Shown in pieces: positions 16,601-63,279 of a stretch of DNA of 64,000 bases. The translations under genes and the position numbers were made by a program. Positions within the stretch are counted from its first letter, which is position 1. The number at the start of each line of letters is the position of its first letter. Source of the DNA: Hypanus sabinus (taxonomy: Eukaryota); contig NC_082721.1 of NCBI RefSeq assembly GCF_030144855.1, positions 43,958,001 to 44,022,000 of the forward strand. Reading direction: 5' to 3'. The notes below the pieces were generated by a model. The model did no database searches. It was not told the DNA's origin and saw only the letters and a program-made list of their open reading frames with translations.

Positions 16601-19176
16601 ACAGAGTGGTACAAGGAATTTAAAAATGAGTTAATTTCTGTTTTACTCCCCACGCTGAACTGGGCTCTAAAAAAGGCACAAATGACACCCAGTTGGAAGG
16701 AACAGATAATCTCAGCTATACCGAAAGAAGGAAAGGATAAAATAGAATGTGGTCATTTAGCCCTATATCCGTTTTTAATGTAGATGATAGATTATTTACC
16801 TCCATCATGGCCAAATGATTATAGGAGTTTCTACCCATACTGATACATAACGATCAGACAGGTATTATAGGACAACACCAAACACAAGACAATATATGAA
16901 GGACACTTCACATTATGGATCATATACAAAAAAATAAAATTGAAGCAATAGTGATAAGCATGAACAATGAAATGGCATTTGATTCATTAATTGGAATTTT
17001 CTTTACAGAGTTTTAGATAGATTTGGTTTGCAAGACACAATTATTAAAACTATACAGACGTAATATGACAACCCTACTGCTAGGATTAAAATTTATGGAT
17101 ATTTACCAAATAGTCTTACCCTAGAAAGGGGCACGAGACAGGGTGGTGCATGGTCACTGCTACTCTTCGCATTATATCTGAAACCATTAGCTCAATACAT
17201 CAGACAAAATGAAGATATCAGGAGAATTACTTTTAAAGGGACAGAGCAGAAATTGGCTTGTTATGCAGATGACATTTTGATCTATCTAGGGCAACCAACA
17301 TACTCTTTGCCTAAATTGATGCAATCCTTTGAACAATATGGTCAATTATCAGGATGCAAGATCAACATAGATAAAACCCAATTACTTTCATATTACTATA
17401 GCCCACCAAGAGAAATTGAAAGTAGATATCCCTGGGCATGGCACAAAGAGTCTTTCAAATATTTGGGCATCATTATGCCAAAAGATTTGGCAAAATTATC
17501 AGAATGTAATTATCAGCCTTTAAATAAAAAAAAATAAGGAAGATATGGCAAGATTGAACCTGATTCCTTTTTTCAGTCTCATTTCTAGGATTGAGTCTAT
17601 TAAAATGAATATACTGCCCAGACCGTTATATCTCTTTCAGACCCTACCAATAGAGATTAATCAAAGTCAATTCAATGAATGGACCAAGATGCTATCAAGG
17701 TATATTTGGCAGGGTAAAAGGCCTAGAGTTCATCTCAAAACTTTGCAATCAGCAAAGGAAAAGAGGGAATGGGACCTACCTTCTCTTAGAGATTATTATT
17801 TTGCAGCACAGTTGAGAGCTGTGATATGTTGGTGCAACCCATCATATGACGCTCAATGGAAAAACATTGAGGAGTGGGTACTTTCCATCCCCATAGAAAC
17901 AATTTTGGCTGATAACAACCTGCAAAGGTACATAAATAATATTGATAACCCATGTGTGAAACTGGCTCTTAAAATATGGAAAACTACTATAAAATAATAT
18001 AATCTGGAGAGAGATATTGCAATTTAAATGGTGTGCATATGATTCGAATTTTATACCAAATAAAATTGGATGCTAGATTTAAGGACTGGGAGGCTAAATG
18101 AATAATAGTTCTTTGCAACATACTGAAAGAAGGAACACTGTTCTGTTTTGAAATAATTAAAGAGAAACACTTCTTACAAAAACAAGATTTTTATCGATAT
18201 TTACAGATGCGACAATATGTTAATAAGATGCTTAAAAATATAACCAAGGCAAGTACATGTTTGATAGAGCTCTTCATATAAGCATATTATTCCGATAATG
18301 GTAGTAGAATCATTTCAAGCATGTATAAGGGCTTTTCAAATCTTAAAACACATTCGACTTCATAAATTAAAACAAAATGGGAGAAGGAAGGAGGGATAAT
18401 TATATCTGAGGAAAAATGGACAATAATATGGAGGTATCAATGGAAGTGTACCAGTTCACAGAGATGGAGGGAGTCTGGATGGAAAAACTTGATAAGATAT
18501 TTTATTACACGCTCTCAGAAATCCCATTATGATAGTAACCTCCCTGTTTGCTGGAGAAATTGTGGAAATCAACATGCAAATCATTATCATATTTTTTGGG
18601 ACTGCCCTGTTATCAAAAACTATTGGAGAGGGATACACAATACCCTACATGACATCTTTAAATGTGAAATACCCTTAGAGAGTAAGACCATATATTTTGG
18701 ATATATATCTCAAGAATGTTTGAAAATAGATAAATATTTAATGAATATATTCTTGGTGGCTGGTAAAAAGACTCTTACTATGAAATTGTTATCACTGCAG
18801 AGACCAACTTTAAATACATAGATGAAAATTACAGTGGACATTTGCAAAATGGAGAAGATAGCAGCATCTGTTAATCATAAGCTGGAACAATTTGATTCAT
18901 ACTGGGAAAAATATAATGCCTCATAGGCCTGATTTTGTTCTCACAAATCAATGAATATGTTGTAAAAAACGATCACCCCCTACTTGTACATAGTTTTTTT
19001 TTCCTTTTGCTTGTTTTTCCTTTCTGCTCTTCTCTATAAGTGTATACCTCAGTAAATACTTTGTGGAGATTTGTGATATATATGATTATATGATATATAT
19101 GTACAATGTCCGAAATACATCTTATGGAAATGTTTGTTTTATGATGAACTTCAATAAAAAATAAGTTACAAAAAAG
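13635..19176 (+). mobile_element. Full-length L1/Tx1-like LINE (5' UTR, ORF1, ORF2, A-tail), frameshifted
   Basis: ORF1 LEGRSRRKNIRIYNVPE and RFQTPY. ORF2 EN ISFNVNGL, YLQETH, CGGD. RT CYADDILIYL (~17260). AATAAA at 19153-19158. TSD tagaccgcaaatt (13622-13634) / tagaccacagatt (19177-19189). Confidence 0.9.
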
Positions 19177-21830: not shown

Positions 21831-22079
21831 ATCATTTGATAAATTTGTGAGCTCTACTACCAAGAAAACAAGGGCAGAATATGCCCGGGAGCACCAGCAC
21901 ATGCAGGTTCACTTCCAAGTCACCCACCATCCTGACATGAAAATATACTGATGGACCTTCATTGTCACTGGTCTCCCCATCCAACACCACCATGGGAGTA
22001 CTTTCAGTAGAGGCACAATGGAAGTCCAAGAAGGCAACTTATCACCACTTTCTCAAGGACAGTTCAGACAATGAAGGGC

Positions 22080-22480
22080 TGATGGAGAAATGAATGAATA
22101 ACTGAACTGTGAGGAACTCGAGATGCATGGATGTATAGGCAAAACTGCTAATATTTAATAGTAGAAACTAAAATAACAATGAAAAATAGATTAGAAAGGG
22201 AGAGGATGTTTGCATCAGAAGAGATTCAAGAACTAGGTGATATGAAATTACAGGGAATGGCAAAAGTGACATGAAGATAATATTCCTCACACAATGAGTG
22301 ACAAGAGAATGCATTGGCAGGGGTAGCAGACAGATTCACTTGGAATGCTTAGAGGGGAACAAGATAAATGTCTATATTTGTAGAGTTATGGAAAGAGGGT
22401 AGAGGGATTGGATTTGCTGGAGTATTCTAACATCAAGCTGGTCTGAGCTCAATAGGCCAAATGGCTTCACTTCCTCAGGT
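22080..22480 (+). mobile_element. Decayed CR1 3' fragment
   Basis: Ends aataggccaaatggcttcacttcct, a CR1-type 3' UTR. Confidence 0.5.
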
Positions 22481-56175: not shown

Positions 56176-58420
56176 CGGGGGTCGGCAACCTGCGGCTCCC
56201 GAGCCATTTGTGGCTCTTTCACCTCTGTGCTGCGGCTCCCTGTGGCTTTGGGAAATAATTGGTCAGTATTTAATTAAAATGTATTTTATGTTAGTTTGTT
56301 AGCTTTTGAAATGTAATTCTAAATTTGAAGATTATGGTGATCTTGTACAATCTAAGTGTGGCGACACATTTCCTGGCAGATCCGAAATGGCTCACAATTA
56401 GCCAGCATTCCGGCTAAGGGAGATAGCCTACGGGGGTTTGTGAGTACGCGTCTTTTGCAGCATCTGCGTCCATGGGGGCTGGGTTGAGGGAGGCTTAAAA
56501 GCAAGGCTGTTTAGTTCGAATAAAATTATTCGACTGCAGTTTACTGACTGCGTGAGCACACCGCTACAACGTGTTTTTATCGCTATTAATATACGTCACC
56601 ACTGCCAATACCTGACACCCGCCAGTGCGCGATTTCTTTAATTTTTCGATCCAAGGTAAGCCAACTATGGAGAATTCTAAAAAAAGAAAAGTGACTGAAG
56701 AAAACAGAACGTTTAATGATACGTGGACAGATTCATTTGCTTTCACTGTTGACGAGACTGGTTTACCGGTATGCTTAATATGCAATGAGAAACTAGCAAA
56801 CAACAAAAAGTCAAATGTCGCAAGGCATTTCCAGAATAAACACGCAGCCTTTGCTCAAAAATATCCGGATGGAGATGAGAGAAAAAAAGCCGTTTCGGAA
56901 CTGATGCGGAAGGTTGATCTGAGCAAAAATCATTTCCAGAAATGGATGAAGTCTGGAAAATCAACGACATACGCCAGTTATATTGACGCTCAGGAAATAG
57001 TCAGGCACGGGAAGCAGTTTACAGATGGTGAATATATAAAAGAATCTTTCATTAAGATTTCAGAACATCTATTCACGGACTTTAAAAACAAGAGTGAAAT
57101 TGTGCAGAAAATCAGGGATATGCCCCTCTCTGCAAAGACTGTCAAAGACAGAACCATAAAAATGGCAGAAGACATCACAAGACAGCAAATTAAAGACATC
57201 AATTCAGCTGTGGCCTACTCGATTGCCTGTGACGAGTCTAAAGACAAAGGTGATATTGAACAAATAGCGTTGTTCTGCCGGTATGTAAACTCTGCCGGGC
57301 CACAGGAAGAACTGATTGAGTTGATACCTCTAAAAGACCAAACACGGGGGGAGGACATCTGTGAGGCTGTCTTGAATTGTTTAAGAGCCAAAGGAATAAA
57401 GACCACCCATCTGGTGTCAGTAGCTACTGATGGGGCACCTGCTGCACAACACAGTCCAGTGGCTGTCCAAAGGGGAGGTGCTGAAACGCTTTGTCGCGTG
57501 TCTGAAAGAAGTGAAAACTTTCCTGGGCAGCAAAGGGCTCAACTTTCCTGAGCTGGAACAGCCAGAGTGGCTGGAAAAGCTACACTTCATGGTAGACATG
57601 ACAGCGCACCTGAACACGCTGAACACAGCTCTTCAACGGGGTAAGGACGTACAGCCCTGCACATGTTGGAGGATGTTTTGGCATTCGAGCGCAAGTTGAC
57701 GTTGCTTGCCAGAGATTTACAGAAAGGCACATTGTCTCACTTCCCCAATTTGAGAGAGTTCAAACAAGGTCACGACATGATAAATTCGGAGTATTTACAT
57801 TCTGCAATCATCGCAATGCAAACATCGTTTGGGAAACGCTTCTGTGAGTTCAGAGAGGAAAAAAACACATTATCCTTCCCGGTCACTCCCCTAAGCATTG
57901 ATCCATCCCTACTAAATACGACTGCATTGTCAGGTGTGAGTCAACCTGAACAAGTATGATAAATATTTTAATTGCCTATTATTTTACGTATATTCATATG
58001 TTTTCATTGTTCAGTGAAATAGTCCTTTTATTTTTCAGGTTGACAGCTGGCTGACGTTATTTTTGGTTTGCTGCTGGCGGCAAATTTAAGTTTGGCGTTT
58101 TTCATAAATACAAGAAGGACTCAAATAGACGTTGAGTATTTTACTTAAAAGTAACCTTCAACCCAACGTCTTTTTTTCGGAGTTCAAAATGTTTTTGTTG
58201 CATGCAGAAATGTAATTTCATTTTCTCTGCAGGAGTTCATCAATTTCATAAATGCAACACATTATAGTTTGTTTATACATAGCATAAAGGCAAAACAAAA
58301 CGTTGTATGCAGTGTTATTTCATTTTAAATGTCAAGCGGGTTTTGCGGCTCCCAGTGTTTTCTTTTCTGTGGGAAACGGGTCCAAGTGGCTCTTTCAGTG
58401 GTAAAGGTTGCTGACCCCTG
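56176..58420 (+). mobile_element. hAT (Buster-type) DNA transposon, internally deleted
   Basis: TIRs cgggggtcggcaacc / ggttgctgacccctg. Perfect 8-bp TSD ACCTATAC (56168-56175, 58421-58428) with central TA. Confidence 0.93.
56667..57950 (+). pseudogene. hAT transposase (GTF2IRD2/EPM2AIP1-like family), two internal deletions
   Basis: MENSKKRKV...PVCLICNEKL...RHFQNKH (BED-like finger), ACDES (first catalytic D), ATDGAP. Jumps at ~57440 to LLHNTVQWLSKGEVL and is cut at ~57947 before the catalytic E region. Confidence 0.88.
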
Positions 58421-60819: not shown

Positions 60820-60825
60820 TTTATT
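60820..60825 (-). terminator. Putative polyadenylation signal of the IgL gene
   Basis: AATAAA on the minus strand about 340 nt after the C-exon stop, the first canonical hexamer I found downstream. Confidence 0.55.
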
Positions 60826-61165
60826 AGCAGTTCTCAGCTGTCACCATCTGTCACTGATCAGAAGTCATTAGGGCACCCATTAATTATTTTAATTAAATCC
60901 ACCCCCGGTGACACAGAAAACTGTTCAGTGGTTTATGTTTCTGATAAAGCCAAATAACTAGCCACTTTTACCCCATGTAGCTTCTCGGCGGGAGAAAGAG
61001 AACAAAACCAGCCTCGGGTGCAAATATTCCAACAACAGTGAAAATTACAGCGAGCTGATCAGACACAGAGTACAGTGAGGAAAGTAATAAACGGGGTGAA
61101 AATGCAAAAAAAAAAAGGTTATCCCCTATTAATCAGGGAGCAAACAGTCCGAAGCCGCGCTCGGT

Positions 61166-61488
61166 TTAACAGCTGGATTGTGTGACTGTTGCGGATATTG
61201 TCGAGGCTGCTCCTTGCTGAACTGAGCAGGAGTACCTCTTCCCACTGCTCCAGTCTGCGCCGGGCACCGTCAGGTAGCTGCTGAGACTGAAGGTTTTGTC
61301 TGCATTCTGAGTCACCCCGCTGGTTTTCACCCCACTGCTCGTCGGACTGCCGTTCACTGTCCAGCTGACGACAGGGAAGCCCACCGACAATTTACTGACC
61401 AGGCAAACTAAGGTGCCGGTTCCTTTAGCGGAGATCTCCTCGGCTGACGGCCCAAGCAGTTTCACTGAAGGGTCGGGGAGCTGCTGAT
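61166..61488 (-). CDS. Ig light-chain constant (C1-set) exon, intact
   Basis: Acceptor ttcccgatccag. (D)QQLPDPSVKLLGPS...TLVCLVSKL...VSWTVNG...FSLSSYLTV...YSCSVQQG...TQSSC-stop has both domain Cys, the Trp and the terminal Cys for the H-L bond. Confidence 0.95.
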
Positions 61489-62640
61489 CTGGATCGGGAA
61501 CAAGAGGAGACATGAATGAGTCACTGAATATCTTGCGATATTCACATTTGGATGGAAGCGTGAGTGAAAGGTTCCAGCTTCCAAGAATGGGGCCCAGGGT
61601 TTCGCTAGGGTGCAAGGCAGTGTCGATGGAGGGCAGAGCATTTTAGTCAACACTGAAGGACTGGACGTTTGTGGCCAAATCCTGCAGAGTCGCTGGATTA
61701 CAACATCACCAGCTCATTGACATCAATTCCAGCTCTTGGGATCTTCCTCGGCCTGTGATACCAGTGACACGTTCCTTCCCTTTGCTCCATCCACTCATCA
61801 CCAATGTGCCCCCTCCCACCTGTGTCACCCACAGCTGTACTGTGAGTAAACCGGTTTCTTGCCTACACAGGCTGCAACGCAACATGTGCGTGGTCCTGAC
61901 TTTCACAGAGCTGGTTTGGGGAAGTCACACTGTGACGATGTGGAAGCAATTACTGTGGGCGAAGTAAGGTGGGATTCTCCCTAGACCCGAAGCTCTGGCC
62001 TGAGTCTGTGTAGCGACCGGAATCACTGAGCGGCCGGACCCCAAAAGGAGCAGTGTTCAGTTGAAAAGGTGGCAGGAGAGAGGAGGGAAGAACCAGGGAA
62101 TTGGATGGGTGTCTGCAAGAGTGTTCTAGCCTGACCGGGAGAAATGGAAGTTCAGTGAAAGTTGGAGGGAGGTATCACCTGAAAATCCTCATACAATAAC
62201 TTGAAACTTGTAGTTGTGTTGTCTTGACAACCGTGGGCTACATCATATCCCCGGTGATACCCTCAGGCCGCATTCTGAGAAGCTGGAACTCCTCACGCTG
62301 GCTTCCAACAAACCAGAGCAAAAGTGGCCAAGCTGATAGGATTGAAACCGCGCAAACATGGAGTTGGATGGACAATTTCAGAAACGAAATATTAAAGTGC
62401 AGAGCCAGAGACACAACACACGGCACCAGCGAGAAAACACAACCGAAAAGACAGCTTGTTTAAAGGCGATAACAATTCACACACAACTCTATATTCACCG
62501 AACACAATTTCATCGACCCACGGTATGTGGAACGACCGGATCGTAAACTTGCGTTTTCATAATCAAATTCGCCAAGAAATAACAACGTATAAATTATTAT
62601 TTGCCAGGTGACCATATGCATGCAGCTCGAAATTGCAGGA

Positions 62641-62650
62641 GGGGTTTCCC
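62641..62650. promoter_or_regulatory. NF-kappaB-type site at the start of the J-C intron (with E-box CAGGTG at 62605-62610)
   Basis: GGGGTTTCCC fits GGGRNNYYCC, 10 nt inside the intron. Motif match only. Confidence 0.4.
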
Positions 62651-62660
62651 TGTCAGTTAC

Positions 62661-63004
62661 CTGTAACAAAGAGCTTGGTCCCTGGGCCGAACATGTAATA
62701 ACTGCTCGATGAAACCCACTTTTCGCAGTTATAGACGGCAGCGTCATTCAGCTCCACATTTTTTATGTTTACCTGGTAAATGGTGCCGGCGCTGTTGACT
62801 GCCGACGTGAAACGGTCGCTGCTGAAGCCAGGCCCATAGGTCGGGGCGCTGAGTGAGTCAAGGTAGTACAGGATCCATTGTGGAACCGTTCCCGGTGTCT
62901 GCTTGTACCAAAATCCTTTGTTCCGATGTCACATTCCAGCGCGGCCGTGGCTCCTGGACGCACCGACACGGTCGGAGGCTGAGTCAAAGTCTGGCATTCT
63001 CCAG
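62661..63004 (-). pseudogene. Ig light-chain V-J fused exon
   Basis: (S)GECQTLTQPPTVSVRPGATAALECDIGTKD / frameshift / WYKQTPGTVPQWILYY...DAAVYNCEKWVSSSSYYMFGPGTKLFVT, then donor G|GTAACT. No heptamer/nonamer between V and J. Confidence 0.92.
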
Positions 63005-63108
63005 CTGTAAAAAAACAGGAATTCAGCTTTAACCATTGACTGTTTAATGTGTCCCCTGAAGCCCACATCAACAACCGCTGGTGGTGCAGACATTCTGCCT
63101 GTACTTAC

Positions 63109-63157
63109 AGCCCAGCCACATTGCCAGAGACCAGAAAAAGCACAACGTCCGTATCAT
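63109..63157 (-). CDS. Ig leader (signal peptide) exon
   Basis: ATG...MIRTLCFFWSLAMWLG plus 1 nt, donor GTAAGT, 104-nt intron, acceptor tttttttacag. Confidence 0.88.
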
Positions 63158-63234
63158 TGCTGTCCGTCAGCCTCCTACGTCCCTTCAAGCCGATGGATCC
63201 GTGACAGACTGTGGCTGCCGTCTCCAATGGTACC

Positions 63235-63279
63235 TATTTATTGAGGCGTTCATACCAGGGAGGAAACCCATGCAAATCA
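63235..63279 (-). promoter_or_regulatory. IgL promoter: decamer/octamer plus TATA-like box
   Basis: TGATTTGCAT (63279-63270) is the light-chain-orientation decamer. AATAAATA (63242-63235) lies ~28 nt downstream and ~80 nt before the ATG. Confidence 0.85.

What the first reader, a model, noticed from the sequence alone, without database searches (positions are those of the whole stretch)
62661..63004. Pre-joined V-J in a sigma-like Ig light-chain cluster
Seen: V framework 3 (DAAVYNC) runs through an 11-aa CDR3 (EKWVSSSSYYM) straight into J (FGPGTKLFVT) and a splice donor. There is no RSS or spacer, while the leader intron and J-C intron are kept, so this is not a retrocopy. Established: cartilaginous fish have germline-joined IgL genes, attributed to RAG activity in germ cells. 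As I recall these are described mainly for lambda (type II), sigma-cart/sigma-2 (type I) and some kappa clusters, with sigma (type IV) described as split. Inference: the long CDR2 and C motifs look sigma, so this may be an undescribed germline-joined sigma gene. The alternative is a somatic rearrangement captured from lymphocyte DNA.
Basis: partly seen in the sequence, partly recalled or inferred. Interest (0 to 1): 0.85.

Follow-up and report, generated by a model that had tools for sequence, protein, structure and literature searches.

The report
Germline-joined sigma light-chain pseudogene in a ray
This is a sigma-type antibody light-chain gene of a stingray-like ray whose V and J pieces are already fused in the genome, but this copy is dead because 13 bases are missing from CDR1; related fish show the fusion is inherited, and that sigma genes are still split in skates and a shark but fused in sawfish.

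Summary
On the minus strand there is a complete light-chain minicluster: octamer, leader, 104-nt intron, one 344-nt V-J exon (62661-63004), 1172-nt intron and an intact C exon. There is no recombination signal (RSS) at the V-J junction.

The isotype is sigma. C is 74-75% identical to GenBank-named shark sigma chains. The gene nests in a clade holding XP_051894291, which a 2025 paper uses as sawfish IgL-sigma. CDR2 is about 6 residues longer than in human lambda or kappa.

Aligned to split sigma clusters I fetched (three skates, one sevengill shark), the window lacks exactly the 379-381 bp from V heptamer to J heptamer, while promoter and both introns stay colinear. That is a RAG-type coding joint. 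Three sawfish sigma clusters on one chromosome are joined in the same way, which argues against a captured somatic rearrangement.

The finding text omits that this copy is a pseudogene. A 13-nt deletion in CDR1 shifts the frame to a TAA at 62769-62771, and YYC has become YNC.

I found no paper reporting joined sigma genes, but key papers were not readable. First-stage notes (unchecked) list at least 8 more joined sigma clusters upstream on the same piece of this genome.

Verdict: a new member of a known kind, of moderate interest.

The parts
63270..63277 (-). Octamer ATTTGCAT of the V promoter
   Evidence: It aligns with ATTTGCAT in Pristis and ATTTGCAC in skates at the same position.
63234..63242 (-). 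TATA-like AATAAATAG
   Evidence: Read. It aligns with TATAA(C/G)TGG of the Pristis and skate clusters. Promoter function is inferred.
63109..63157 (-). Leader exon (MIRTLCFFWSLAMWLG + 1 nt), donor GTAAGT
   Evidence: 87-91% DNA identity to the leader exons of Pristis and Leucoraja.
63005..63108 (-). Leader intron, 104 nt
   Evidence: 82-84% identical to the Pristis leader introns.
62661..63004 (-). Single fused V-J exon, 344 nt (357 nt in the intact Pristis L006 gene)
62911..62912 (-). Site of the 13-nt CDR1 deletion. Two nt (TT) stand where 15 nt (5 codons) stand in relatives, and the frame shifts here.
   Evidence: tblastn break between 62913 and 62910. Kabat CDR1 is 11 aa in 46 of the 49 homologues where it could be read and 6 aa here. 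A 13-column gap appears in the DNA alignments.
62769..62771 (-). First in-frame stop (TAA) when read from the leader ATG, after 94 codons and 108 nt upstream of the last exon junction
62728..62730 (-). AAC (Asn) where relatives have TAC (Tyr) in the Y-Y-C motif
   Evidence: The Asn is otherwise seen only in P0012.
62691..62700 (-). V-J coding joint: V end ...AGTTATTAC, one A, then TGTTCGG of J
   Evidence: Split skate genes end V at ...TTAC(G/A)|CACAGTG and start J at CACTGTG|GGGGGTGTTCGG.
61489..62660 (-). J-C intron, 1172 nt
   Evidence: The first 150 nt are 72-75% identical to Pristis J-C introns.
61166..61488 (-). C exon, open and intact, 107 codons ending QSSC plus TAA
   Evidence: 95% identity to Hypanus and Mobula C; 74-75% to named shark sigma.
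60820..60893 (-). Candidate polyadenylation signals: ATTAAA at 60888-60893 and AATAAA at 60820-60825
   Evidence: Motif match only; not tested.

Best explanation
This is a V-J-C minicluster of the sigma (type IV) immunoglobulin light-chain isotype in a myliobatiform ray. Its V and J segments were fused in the germline by RAG-type recombination.

The ancestral arrangement is V, heptamer, 12-bp spacer, nonamer, about 340 bp, nonamer, 23-bp spacer, heptamer, J. That whole signal-to-signal segment was excised and the coding ends were joined in frame. This left one V-J exon with a fixed 11-residue CDR3, while the promoter, leader intron and J-C intron remained.

Such a gene needs no somatic rearrangement. 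It would give an invariant sigma chain, variable only through hypermutation.

This copy has since died. A 13-nt deletion in CDR1 shifts the reading frame, so translation from the leader ATG stops at a TAA after 94 codons, which probably makes the transcript a target for nonsense-mediated decay. A framework Tyr has also become Asn.

Shown here: the anatomy, the isotype, the exact absence of the RSS-to-RSS segment, the frameshift, and the same fused architecture in three sawfish genes.

Inferred: that RAG acted in germ cells, that the allele is germline in this individual, and that the transcript is degraded.
For: - Anatomy and frames.
- Domains.
- Sigma identity:
  - C is 74-75% identical to ABO64185 and ABO64184, both named 'immunoglobulin sigma light chain'.
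  - The tree puts the window inside a myliobatiform clade (SH-aLRT 100), within batoids (100), within the clade holding those named sigma chains.
  - P0023 is XP_051894291.1, which PMC12227049 lists as 'Prpe IgLS'.
  - The CDR2 region is 6 residues longer than in human lambda or kappa, as PMC5985310 and PMC5192425 state for sigma.
- RAG-type joint:
  - Split sigma clusters of Leucoraja (L002), Amblyraja (L003), Rhinoraja (L008) and Heptranchias (L007) carry CACAGTG, a 12-bp spacer and ACAAAAACT after V, and a 23-bp spacer with CACTGTG before J.
  - The window lacks exactly that 379-381 bp segment and aligns on both sides of it.
- Germline rather than somatic:
  - Three Pristis sigma clusters at 6.02, 6.07 and 6.22 Mb of one chromosome are all joined.
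  - The window's exon is 13 nt shorter than Pristis L006 and has the same junction register.
  - The nearest relative, P0002, spans 2016 bp against 1992+13 bp here. That leaves no room for a 380-bp V-J spacer unless its J-C intron is shorter by about that much.
- Pseudogene: 13-nt gap and premature stop.
Against: - I could not see raw reads or non-lymphoid DNA of this individual, so germline status here rests on comparison.
- The 13-nt gap could in principle be an assembly error or one of two alleles.
- DNA of the closest relatives (Mobula, Hypanus, Hemitrygon) could not be fetched, so whether their sigma genes are joined is not shown directly.
- RefSeq models cannot stand in for that DNA. Models that look joined (P0032, P0036, P0048) come from split genes.
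Confidence: 0.85

Rival explanations
1. It is a working germline-joined sigma gene. The 13-nt gap in CDR1 is an assembly error, or the null allele of a heterozygous pair.
For: Everything else is intact: octamer, all four splice sites, the 190 codons from FR2 to the end of C, and the C-terminal Cys. A single lesion points to recent damage or an artefact.
Against: - A 13-nt loss is not the usual long-read homopolymer error.
- A second oddity, YYC>YNC, affects a framework position that is Tyr in nearly all homologues.
- No RefSeq protein identical to this gene turned up among the hits.
Confidence: 0.08
2. It is a somatic V-J rearrangement from lymphocyte DNA that entered the assembly, and the germline locus is split.
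For: The junction looks like any coding joint. Split sigma genes exist in skates and sharks.
Against: - An assembly consensus reflects most cells, not one B-cell clone.
- Three separate sawfish clusters are joined in another assembly.
- The junction register equals that of Pristis L006.
- The gene span of the sister Mobula gene fits a joined exon.
- Unchecked first-stage notes list at least 8 further joined sigma clusters on the same piece of this genome.
Confidence: 0.04
3. The fusion arose by a non-RAG route, either a random deletion or a partly processed retrocopy.
For: None specific.
Against: - Both introns are kept and are homologous to those of split genes, which excludes a retrocopy.
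- The breakpoints fall within a few nt of the heptamer/coding borders and keep the frame, as expected of V(D)J joining and not of a random deletion.
Confidence: 0.02

Closest known systems
Germline-joined type I (sigma-2/sigma-cart) and type II (lambda) light-chain clusters of skates, and joined lambda, kappa and sigma-2 clusters of nurse shark (as reviewed in PMC5192425 and PMC4279169)
   Same: A V-J-C minicluster with V and J fused in the genome, no RSS, leader and J-C introns kept, and the fusion attributed to RAG activity in germ cells.
   Different: The isotype here is sigma (type IV). The reviews I could read do not list sigma among the joined genes. In the three skates I checked, the sigma cluster examined is split, although skate sigma-2 genes, and lambda genes in all species studied, are reported as all joined.
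Shark and skate sigma (type IV) light chains (GenBank ABO64184-ABO64188, Criscitiello and Flajnik 2007; 'Prpe IgLS' XP_051894291 in PMC12227049)
   Same: C is 74-75% identical. The CDR2 is long. The same 11-residue Kabat CDR1 is seen in the family, the J motif is the same FGxGTKLFV, and the chain has the same C-terminal Cys.
   Different: The shark (Heptranchias) and skate genes are split, with a V 12-RSS and a J 23-RSS 379-381 bp apart. This gene is joined and broken.
Joined sigma-2 genes of spotted gar, coelacanth and turtles (PMC5985310)
   Same: V and J are joined at the genomic level in a minor light-chain isotype.
   Different: A different isotype and different lineages. Those are one to four genes per genome, whereas here there is apparently an array.

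Membership tests
Ig sigma (type IV) light chain | The C domain groups with reference sigma chains rather than lambda, kappa or sigma-2. | tested here: met
   74-75% identity to GenBank-named sigma of Heterodontus and Ginglymostoma. It is in the same clade as XP_051894291, used as IgL-sigma in PMC12227049. No sigma-2, lambda or kappa shark references were in the tree, so exclusion of those isotypes is indirect.
Ig sigma (type IV) light chain | CDR2 longer than in other isotypes (IMGT 9-10 residues, per PMC5985310). | tested here: met
   There are 47 residues from after FR2 Tyr55 to Cys104, against 36-39 for FR3 alone, which gives about 9-10 for CDR2. The region is 6 residues longer than in human lambda and kappa in HMMER alignments (rule).
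Ig sigma (type IV) light chain | Characteristic, conserved CDR1 length. | tested here: not met
   Kabat CDR1 is 11 aa in 46 of the 49 homologues where it could be read, while this gene has 6 codons plus 2 nt. This is the disabling deletion, not a different isotype.
Germline-joined Ig cluster of cartilaginous fish | V and J are contiguous in one exon, with no RSS and no spacer. | tested here: met
Germline-joined Ig cluster of cartilaginous fish | Introns and promoter are retained (not a retrocopy), and split homologues exist whose RSS borders match the breakpoints. | tested here: met
   The 379-381 bp RSS-to-RSS segment of L002, L003, L007 and L008 is exactly what is missing.
Germline-joined Ig cluster of cartilaginous fish | The joined form is present in non-lymphoid or germ-cell DNA and is inherited. 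| not testable with these tools
   Indirect support only: three joined clusters in the Pristis assembly, the same junction register, and the gene span of the Mobula sister gene.
Functional light-chain gene | One open reading frame across leader, V-J and C. | tested here: not met
   A frameshift at 62911-62912 leads to a TAA at 62769-62771 after 94 codons.

The most novel reading that the evidence does not exclude
Sigma, the one cartilaginous-fish light-chain isotype not reported as germline-joined, may be joined throughout sawfish and myliobatiform rays while it stays split in skates and sharks. That would be the reverse of skates, where sigma-2 and lambda are joined and sigma is not. Different junctions in sawfish (10, 11 and 13 codons) would then record repeated germline RAG events in one gene family. 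The split-versus-joined distribution across batoid orders would allow those events to be dated.
Probability: 0.45. Interest if true: 0.55.

Novelty: new member of a known kind. Interest (0 to 1): 0.4.

Why it matters
Germline-joined antibody genes are the clearest sign that the V(D)J recombinase has acted in germ cells, and they fix part of the antibody repertoire in the genome. If sigma is joined in sawfish and stingray-like rays but split in skates and sharks, all four light-chain isotypes can take this path. That would also give a dated, lineage-by-lineage natural experiment in how often it happens and what becomes of the fixed genes, including decay, as in this copy.

There is also a practical point. 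Automatic RefSeq models cannot be used to score joined versus split, because they imitate rearranged transcripts even when the gene is split.

Tried and rejected
- **RefSeq models as evidence of joining.** I first took the full-length V-J-C RefSeq models of rays as evidence that their genes are joined. I rejected this because P0032 (Amblyraja), P0036 (Rhinoraja) and P0048 (Heptranchias) look joined but their loci are split. P0033 (Leucoraja) reads through its RSS.
- **Genomic DNA of close relatives.** DNA for Hypanus, Mobula and Scyliorhinus could not be fetched because the files are too large.
- **Protein search with the V-J exon.** This was meant to find genomic ORFs of other rays and gave one unrelated-length hit.
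- **PDB search with the C domain.** It was dominated by multi-domain heavy chains and said nothing about isotype.
- **Logan contig L001.** It is a cDNA, so it says nothing about germline structure.
- **Single-base homopolymer error as the cause of the frameshift.** I rejected this because the gap is 13 nt in the alignments.
- **Other Ig exons in the window.** None were found.
- **Literature.** Seven full-text searches found no report of joined sigma genes. Criscitiello and Flajnik 2007, Hsu et al. 2006 and two J Immunol papers I requested by DOI from memory (on nurse shark Ig genes) are not held, so prior description cannot be excluded.
- **Species.** The species of the window was not determined. 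It is about as far from Mobula hypostoma as M. birostris is.

Full report
**What is there**

The feature lies on the minus strand at the right-hand end of the window.

- An octamer ATTTGCAT (63270-63277) and a TATA-like motif precede the leader exon.
- The leader exon is 63109-63157 (MIRTLCFFWSLAMWLG plus one base) with donor GTAAGT.
- A 104-nt intron follows, then one 344-nt exon (62661-63004). This exon runs from FR1 through DAAVYNC and an 11-residue CDR3 into FGPGTKLFVT and the donor G|GTAACT.
- A 1172-nt intron leads to an open C exon (61166-61488) ending QSSC-stop.
- Pfam calls V-set (E=2e-12) and C1-set (E=7e-18).
- No heptamer lies at the V-J junction.
- tblastn with six relatives finds no other Ig exon in the 64 kb. 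The rest is transposon-rich.

**What the finding text left out**

FR1 is in the leader's frame, but FR2 through J and C are in another frame.

- The Kabat CDR1 is 11 residues in 46 of the 49 sigma homologues where it could be read. This gene has six codons plus two bases.
- In DNA alignments with sawfish and skate genes the difference is one clean 13-column gap.
- Read from the leader ATG, the spliced message stops at a TAA (62769-62771) after 94 codons, 108 nt before the last exon junction.
- The second Tyr of the Y-Y-C motif is Asn (AAC at 62728-62730).

The copy is therefore a pseudogene with otherwise intact signals. An earlier first-stage note (s1-146855) had flagged the same two lesions, and I confirm them.

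**Isotype**

- A search with the C domain returned 53 elasmobranch light chains. The best were 95% identical (Hypanus sabinus, Mobula hypostoma).
- It also returned GenBank entries named 'immunoglobulin sigma light chain' from Heterodontus and Ginglymostoma at 74-75% identity. A zebrafish chain scored 41%.
- One sawfish hit, P0023, is XP_051894291.1. PMC12227049 lists this accession as Pristis IgL-sigma.
- In a maximum-likelihood tree the window's gene is sister to Mobula hypostoma XP_062888156.1 (90% identity). It sits inside a myliobatiform clade (SH-aLRT 100), inside batoids (100), inside the clade holding the named shark sigma chains.
- Against human lambda and kappa V domains, the CDR2 region carries six extra residues. 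This matches the long CDR2 given as the mark of sigma in PMC5985310 and PMC5192425.

I did not have shark sigma-2, lambda or kappa sequences to add as outgroups, so their exclusion is indirect.

**How the fusion arose**

Genomic DNA could be fetched for seven related sigma clusters.

- Four are split: Leucoraja erinacea (L002), Amblyraja radiata (L003), Rhinoraja longicauda (L008) and the sevengill shark Heptranchias perlo (L007).
- In these, V is followed by CACAGTG, a 12-bp spacer and ACAAAAACT. J is preceded by a conserved but weak nonamer, a 23-bp spacer and CACTGTG.
- The distance from the first base of the V heptamer to the last base of the J heptamer is 379-381 bp in all four.
- Aligned to these, the window's cluster matches through the promoter, leader, leader intron, V, J and the start of the J-C intron. 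It lacks exactly that signal-to-signal segment.
- The joint reads V end ...AGTTATTAC, one A, then TGTTCGG. Skate V ends at ...TTAC(G/A) and skate J starts GGGGGTGTTCGG. The joint therefore needs only a few bases of J trimming and no clear N addition.

Precise loss of the RSS-flanked segment, with an in-frame coding joint and retained introns, is what RAG-mediated joining produces. A retrocopy or a random deletion would not look like this.

**Germline or somatic**

I cannot see reads or other tissues, so this step is inferred. The support is as follows.

- Three sawfish sigma clusters (L004, L005, L006, at 6.07, 6.02 and 6.22 Mb of one chromosome) are all joined and have no RSS. One B-cell clone dominating an assembly at three loci is not credible.
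- The sawfish L006 exon is 357 nt, exactly the window's 344 plus 13, with the same junction register.
- The window's nearest relative in Mobula spans 2016 bp from start to stop, against 1992+13 here. That leaves no room for a 380-bp spacer unless its J-C intron is shorter by about that much.
- Unchecked first-stage notes report at least eight more joined sigma clusters 72-837 kb upstream on the same piece of this genome. I could not test these.

The three sawfish junctions differ (10, 11 and 13 codons), so either several joining events or later indels occurred.

**A caution that changed my reasoning**

I first read the many full-length RefSeq models as proof of joined genes. That is wrong.

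- The Amblyraja, Rhinoraja and Heptranchias models show clean V-J junctions, yet their genes are split.
- The Leucoraja model reads through its RSS.

Gene models therefore cannot score joined versus split. The state of sigma in Hypanus, Mobula and Hemitrygon remains unverified at DNA level, because their files could not be read.

**Comparison with what is known**

- They also say a few nurse shark kappa genes and one sigma-2 gene are joined, and attribute joining to RAG activity in germ cells.
- Joined sigma-2 genes are also known in gar, coelacanth and turtles.
- None of the texts I could read mentions joined sigma genes, and seven searches found no such report.
- The primary sigma paper and three other papers I requested are not in the library, so prior description cannot be ruled out.

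**Verdict**

This is a germline-joined sigma light-chain cluster, which I could not find described for this isotype, but the copy is a pseudogene. The phenomenon is a further case of a well-known one.

The more interesting result is comparative. Sigma is split in three skates and a shark, and joined in sawfish and in this ray.

Noticed in passing
L003:10001-12490, L008:3001-5704, L007:3001-8058, L002:10001-12736: RefSeq/Gnomon protein models P0032, P0036 and P0048 show clean, rearranged-looking V-J junctions although their genes are split by RSSs. P0033 instead reads through RSS sequence (AHRNHTLWG). Annotated light-chain proteins of elasmobranchs therefore mimic rearranged transcripts and cannot be used to infer germline joining.
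   Followed up: yes
L002:10460-10840; L003:10467-10846; L008:3453-3831; L007:3482-3862: The V-heptamer to J-heptamer distance is 379-381 bp in three skates and a hexanchiform shark, and the spacer sequence is highly similar between Leucoraja and Amblyraja. Such constant spacing over a very old split is unexplained.
   Followed up: partly
L002:10802-10840 and the same place in L003, L008, L007: The J-side nonamer (GGATAACTG in skates) is far from the GGTTTTTGT consensus. It is nevertheless conserved at 23-bp spacing across the skates and, one base off, in Heptranchias.
   Followed up: no
L004:10440-10470, L005, L006 (same region): The three joined sawfish sigma genes have different junctions. 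L004 keeps the full TGGGTGTTCGG J start (13-codon CDR3), L006 has the same register as the window (11 codons), and L005 is shorter (10 codons). This suggests more than one germline joining event, or later indels.
   Followed up: partly
window 62769-62776: A Leu-to-Val change (TTG to GTA) in FR3 creates CAG|GTAAAC. This sequence supplies the TAA that ends the shifted frame, and it also resembles a 5' splice site inside the V-J exon.
   Followed up: no
L003:20684-20956 (-) and 22042-22140 (+): Further V-like sequences (48% and 67% identity to the sigma V) lie 8-10 kb downstream of the Amblyraja sigma cluster. Their isotype and state are unknown.
   Followed up: no
window 17064-17534 (+); 56616-57548 (+): The rest of the window is transposon-rich. 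One ORF is a reverse-transcriptase fragment (RVT_1, E=4e-16). A 311-aa ORF has a Spin-doc-type zinc finger (above Pfam's cut-off) and a sub-threshold DUF4371 match (22 bits against a cut-off of 32), which may be a domesticated or decaying DNA-transposon gene.
   Followed up: partly
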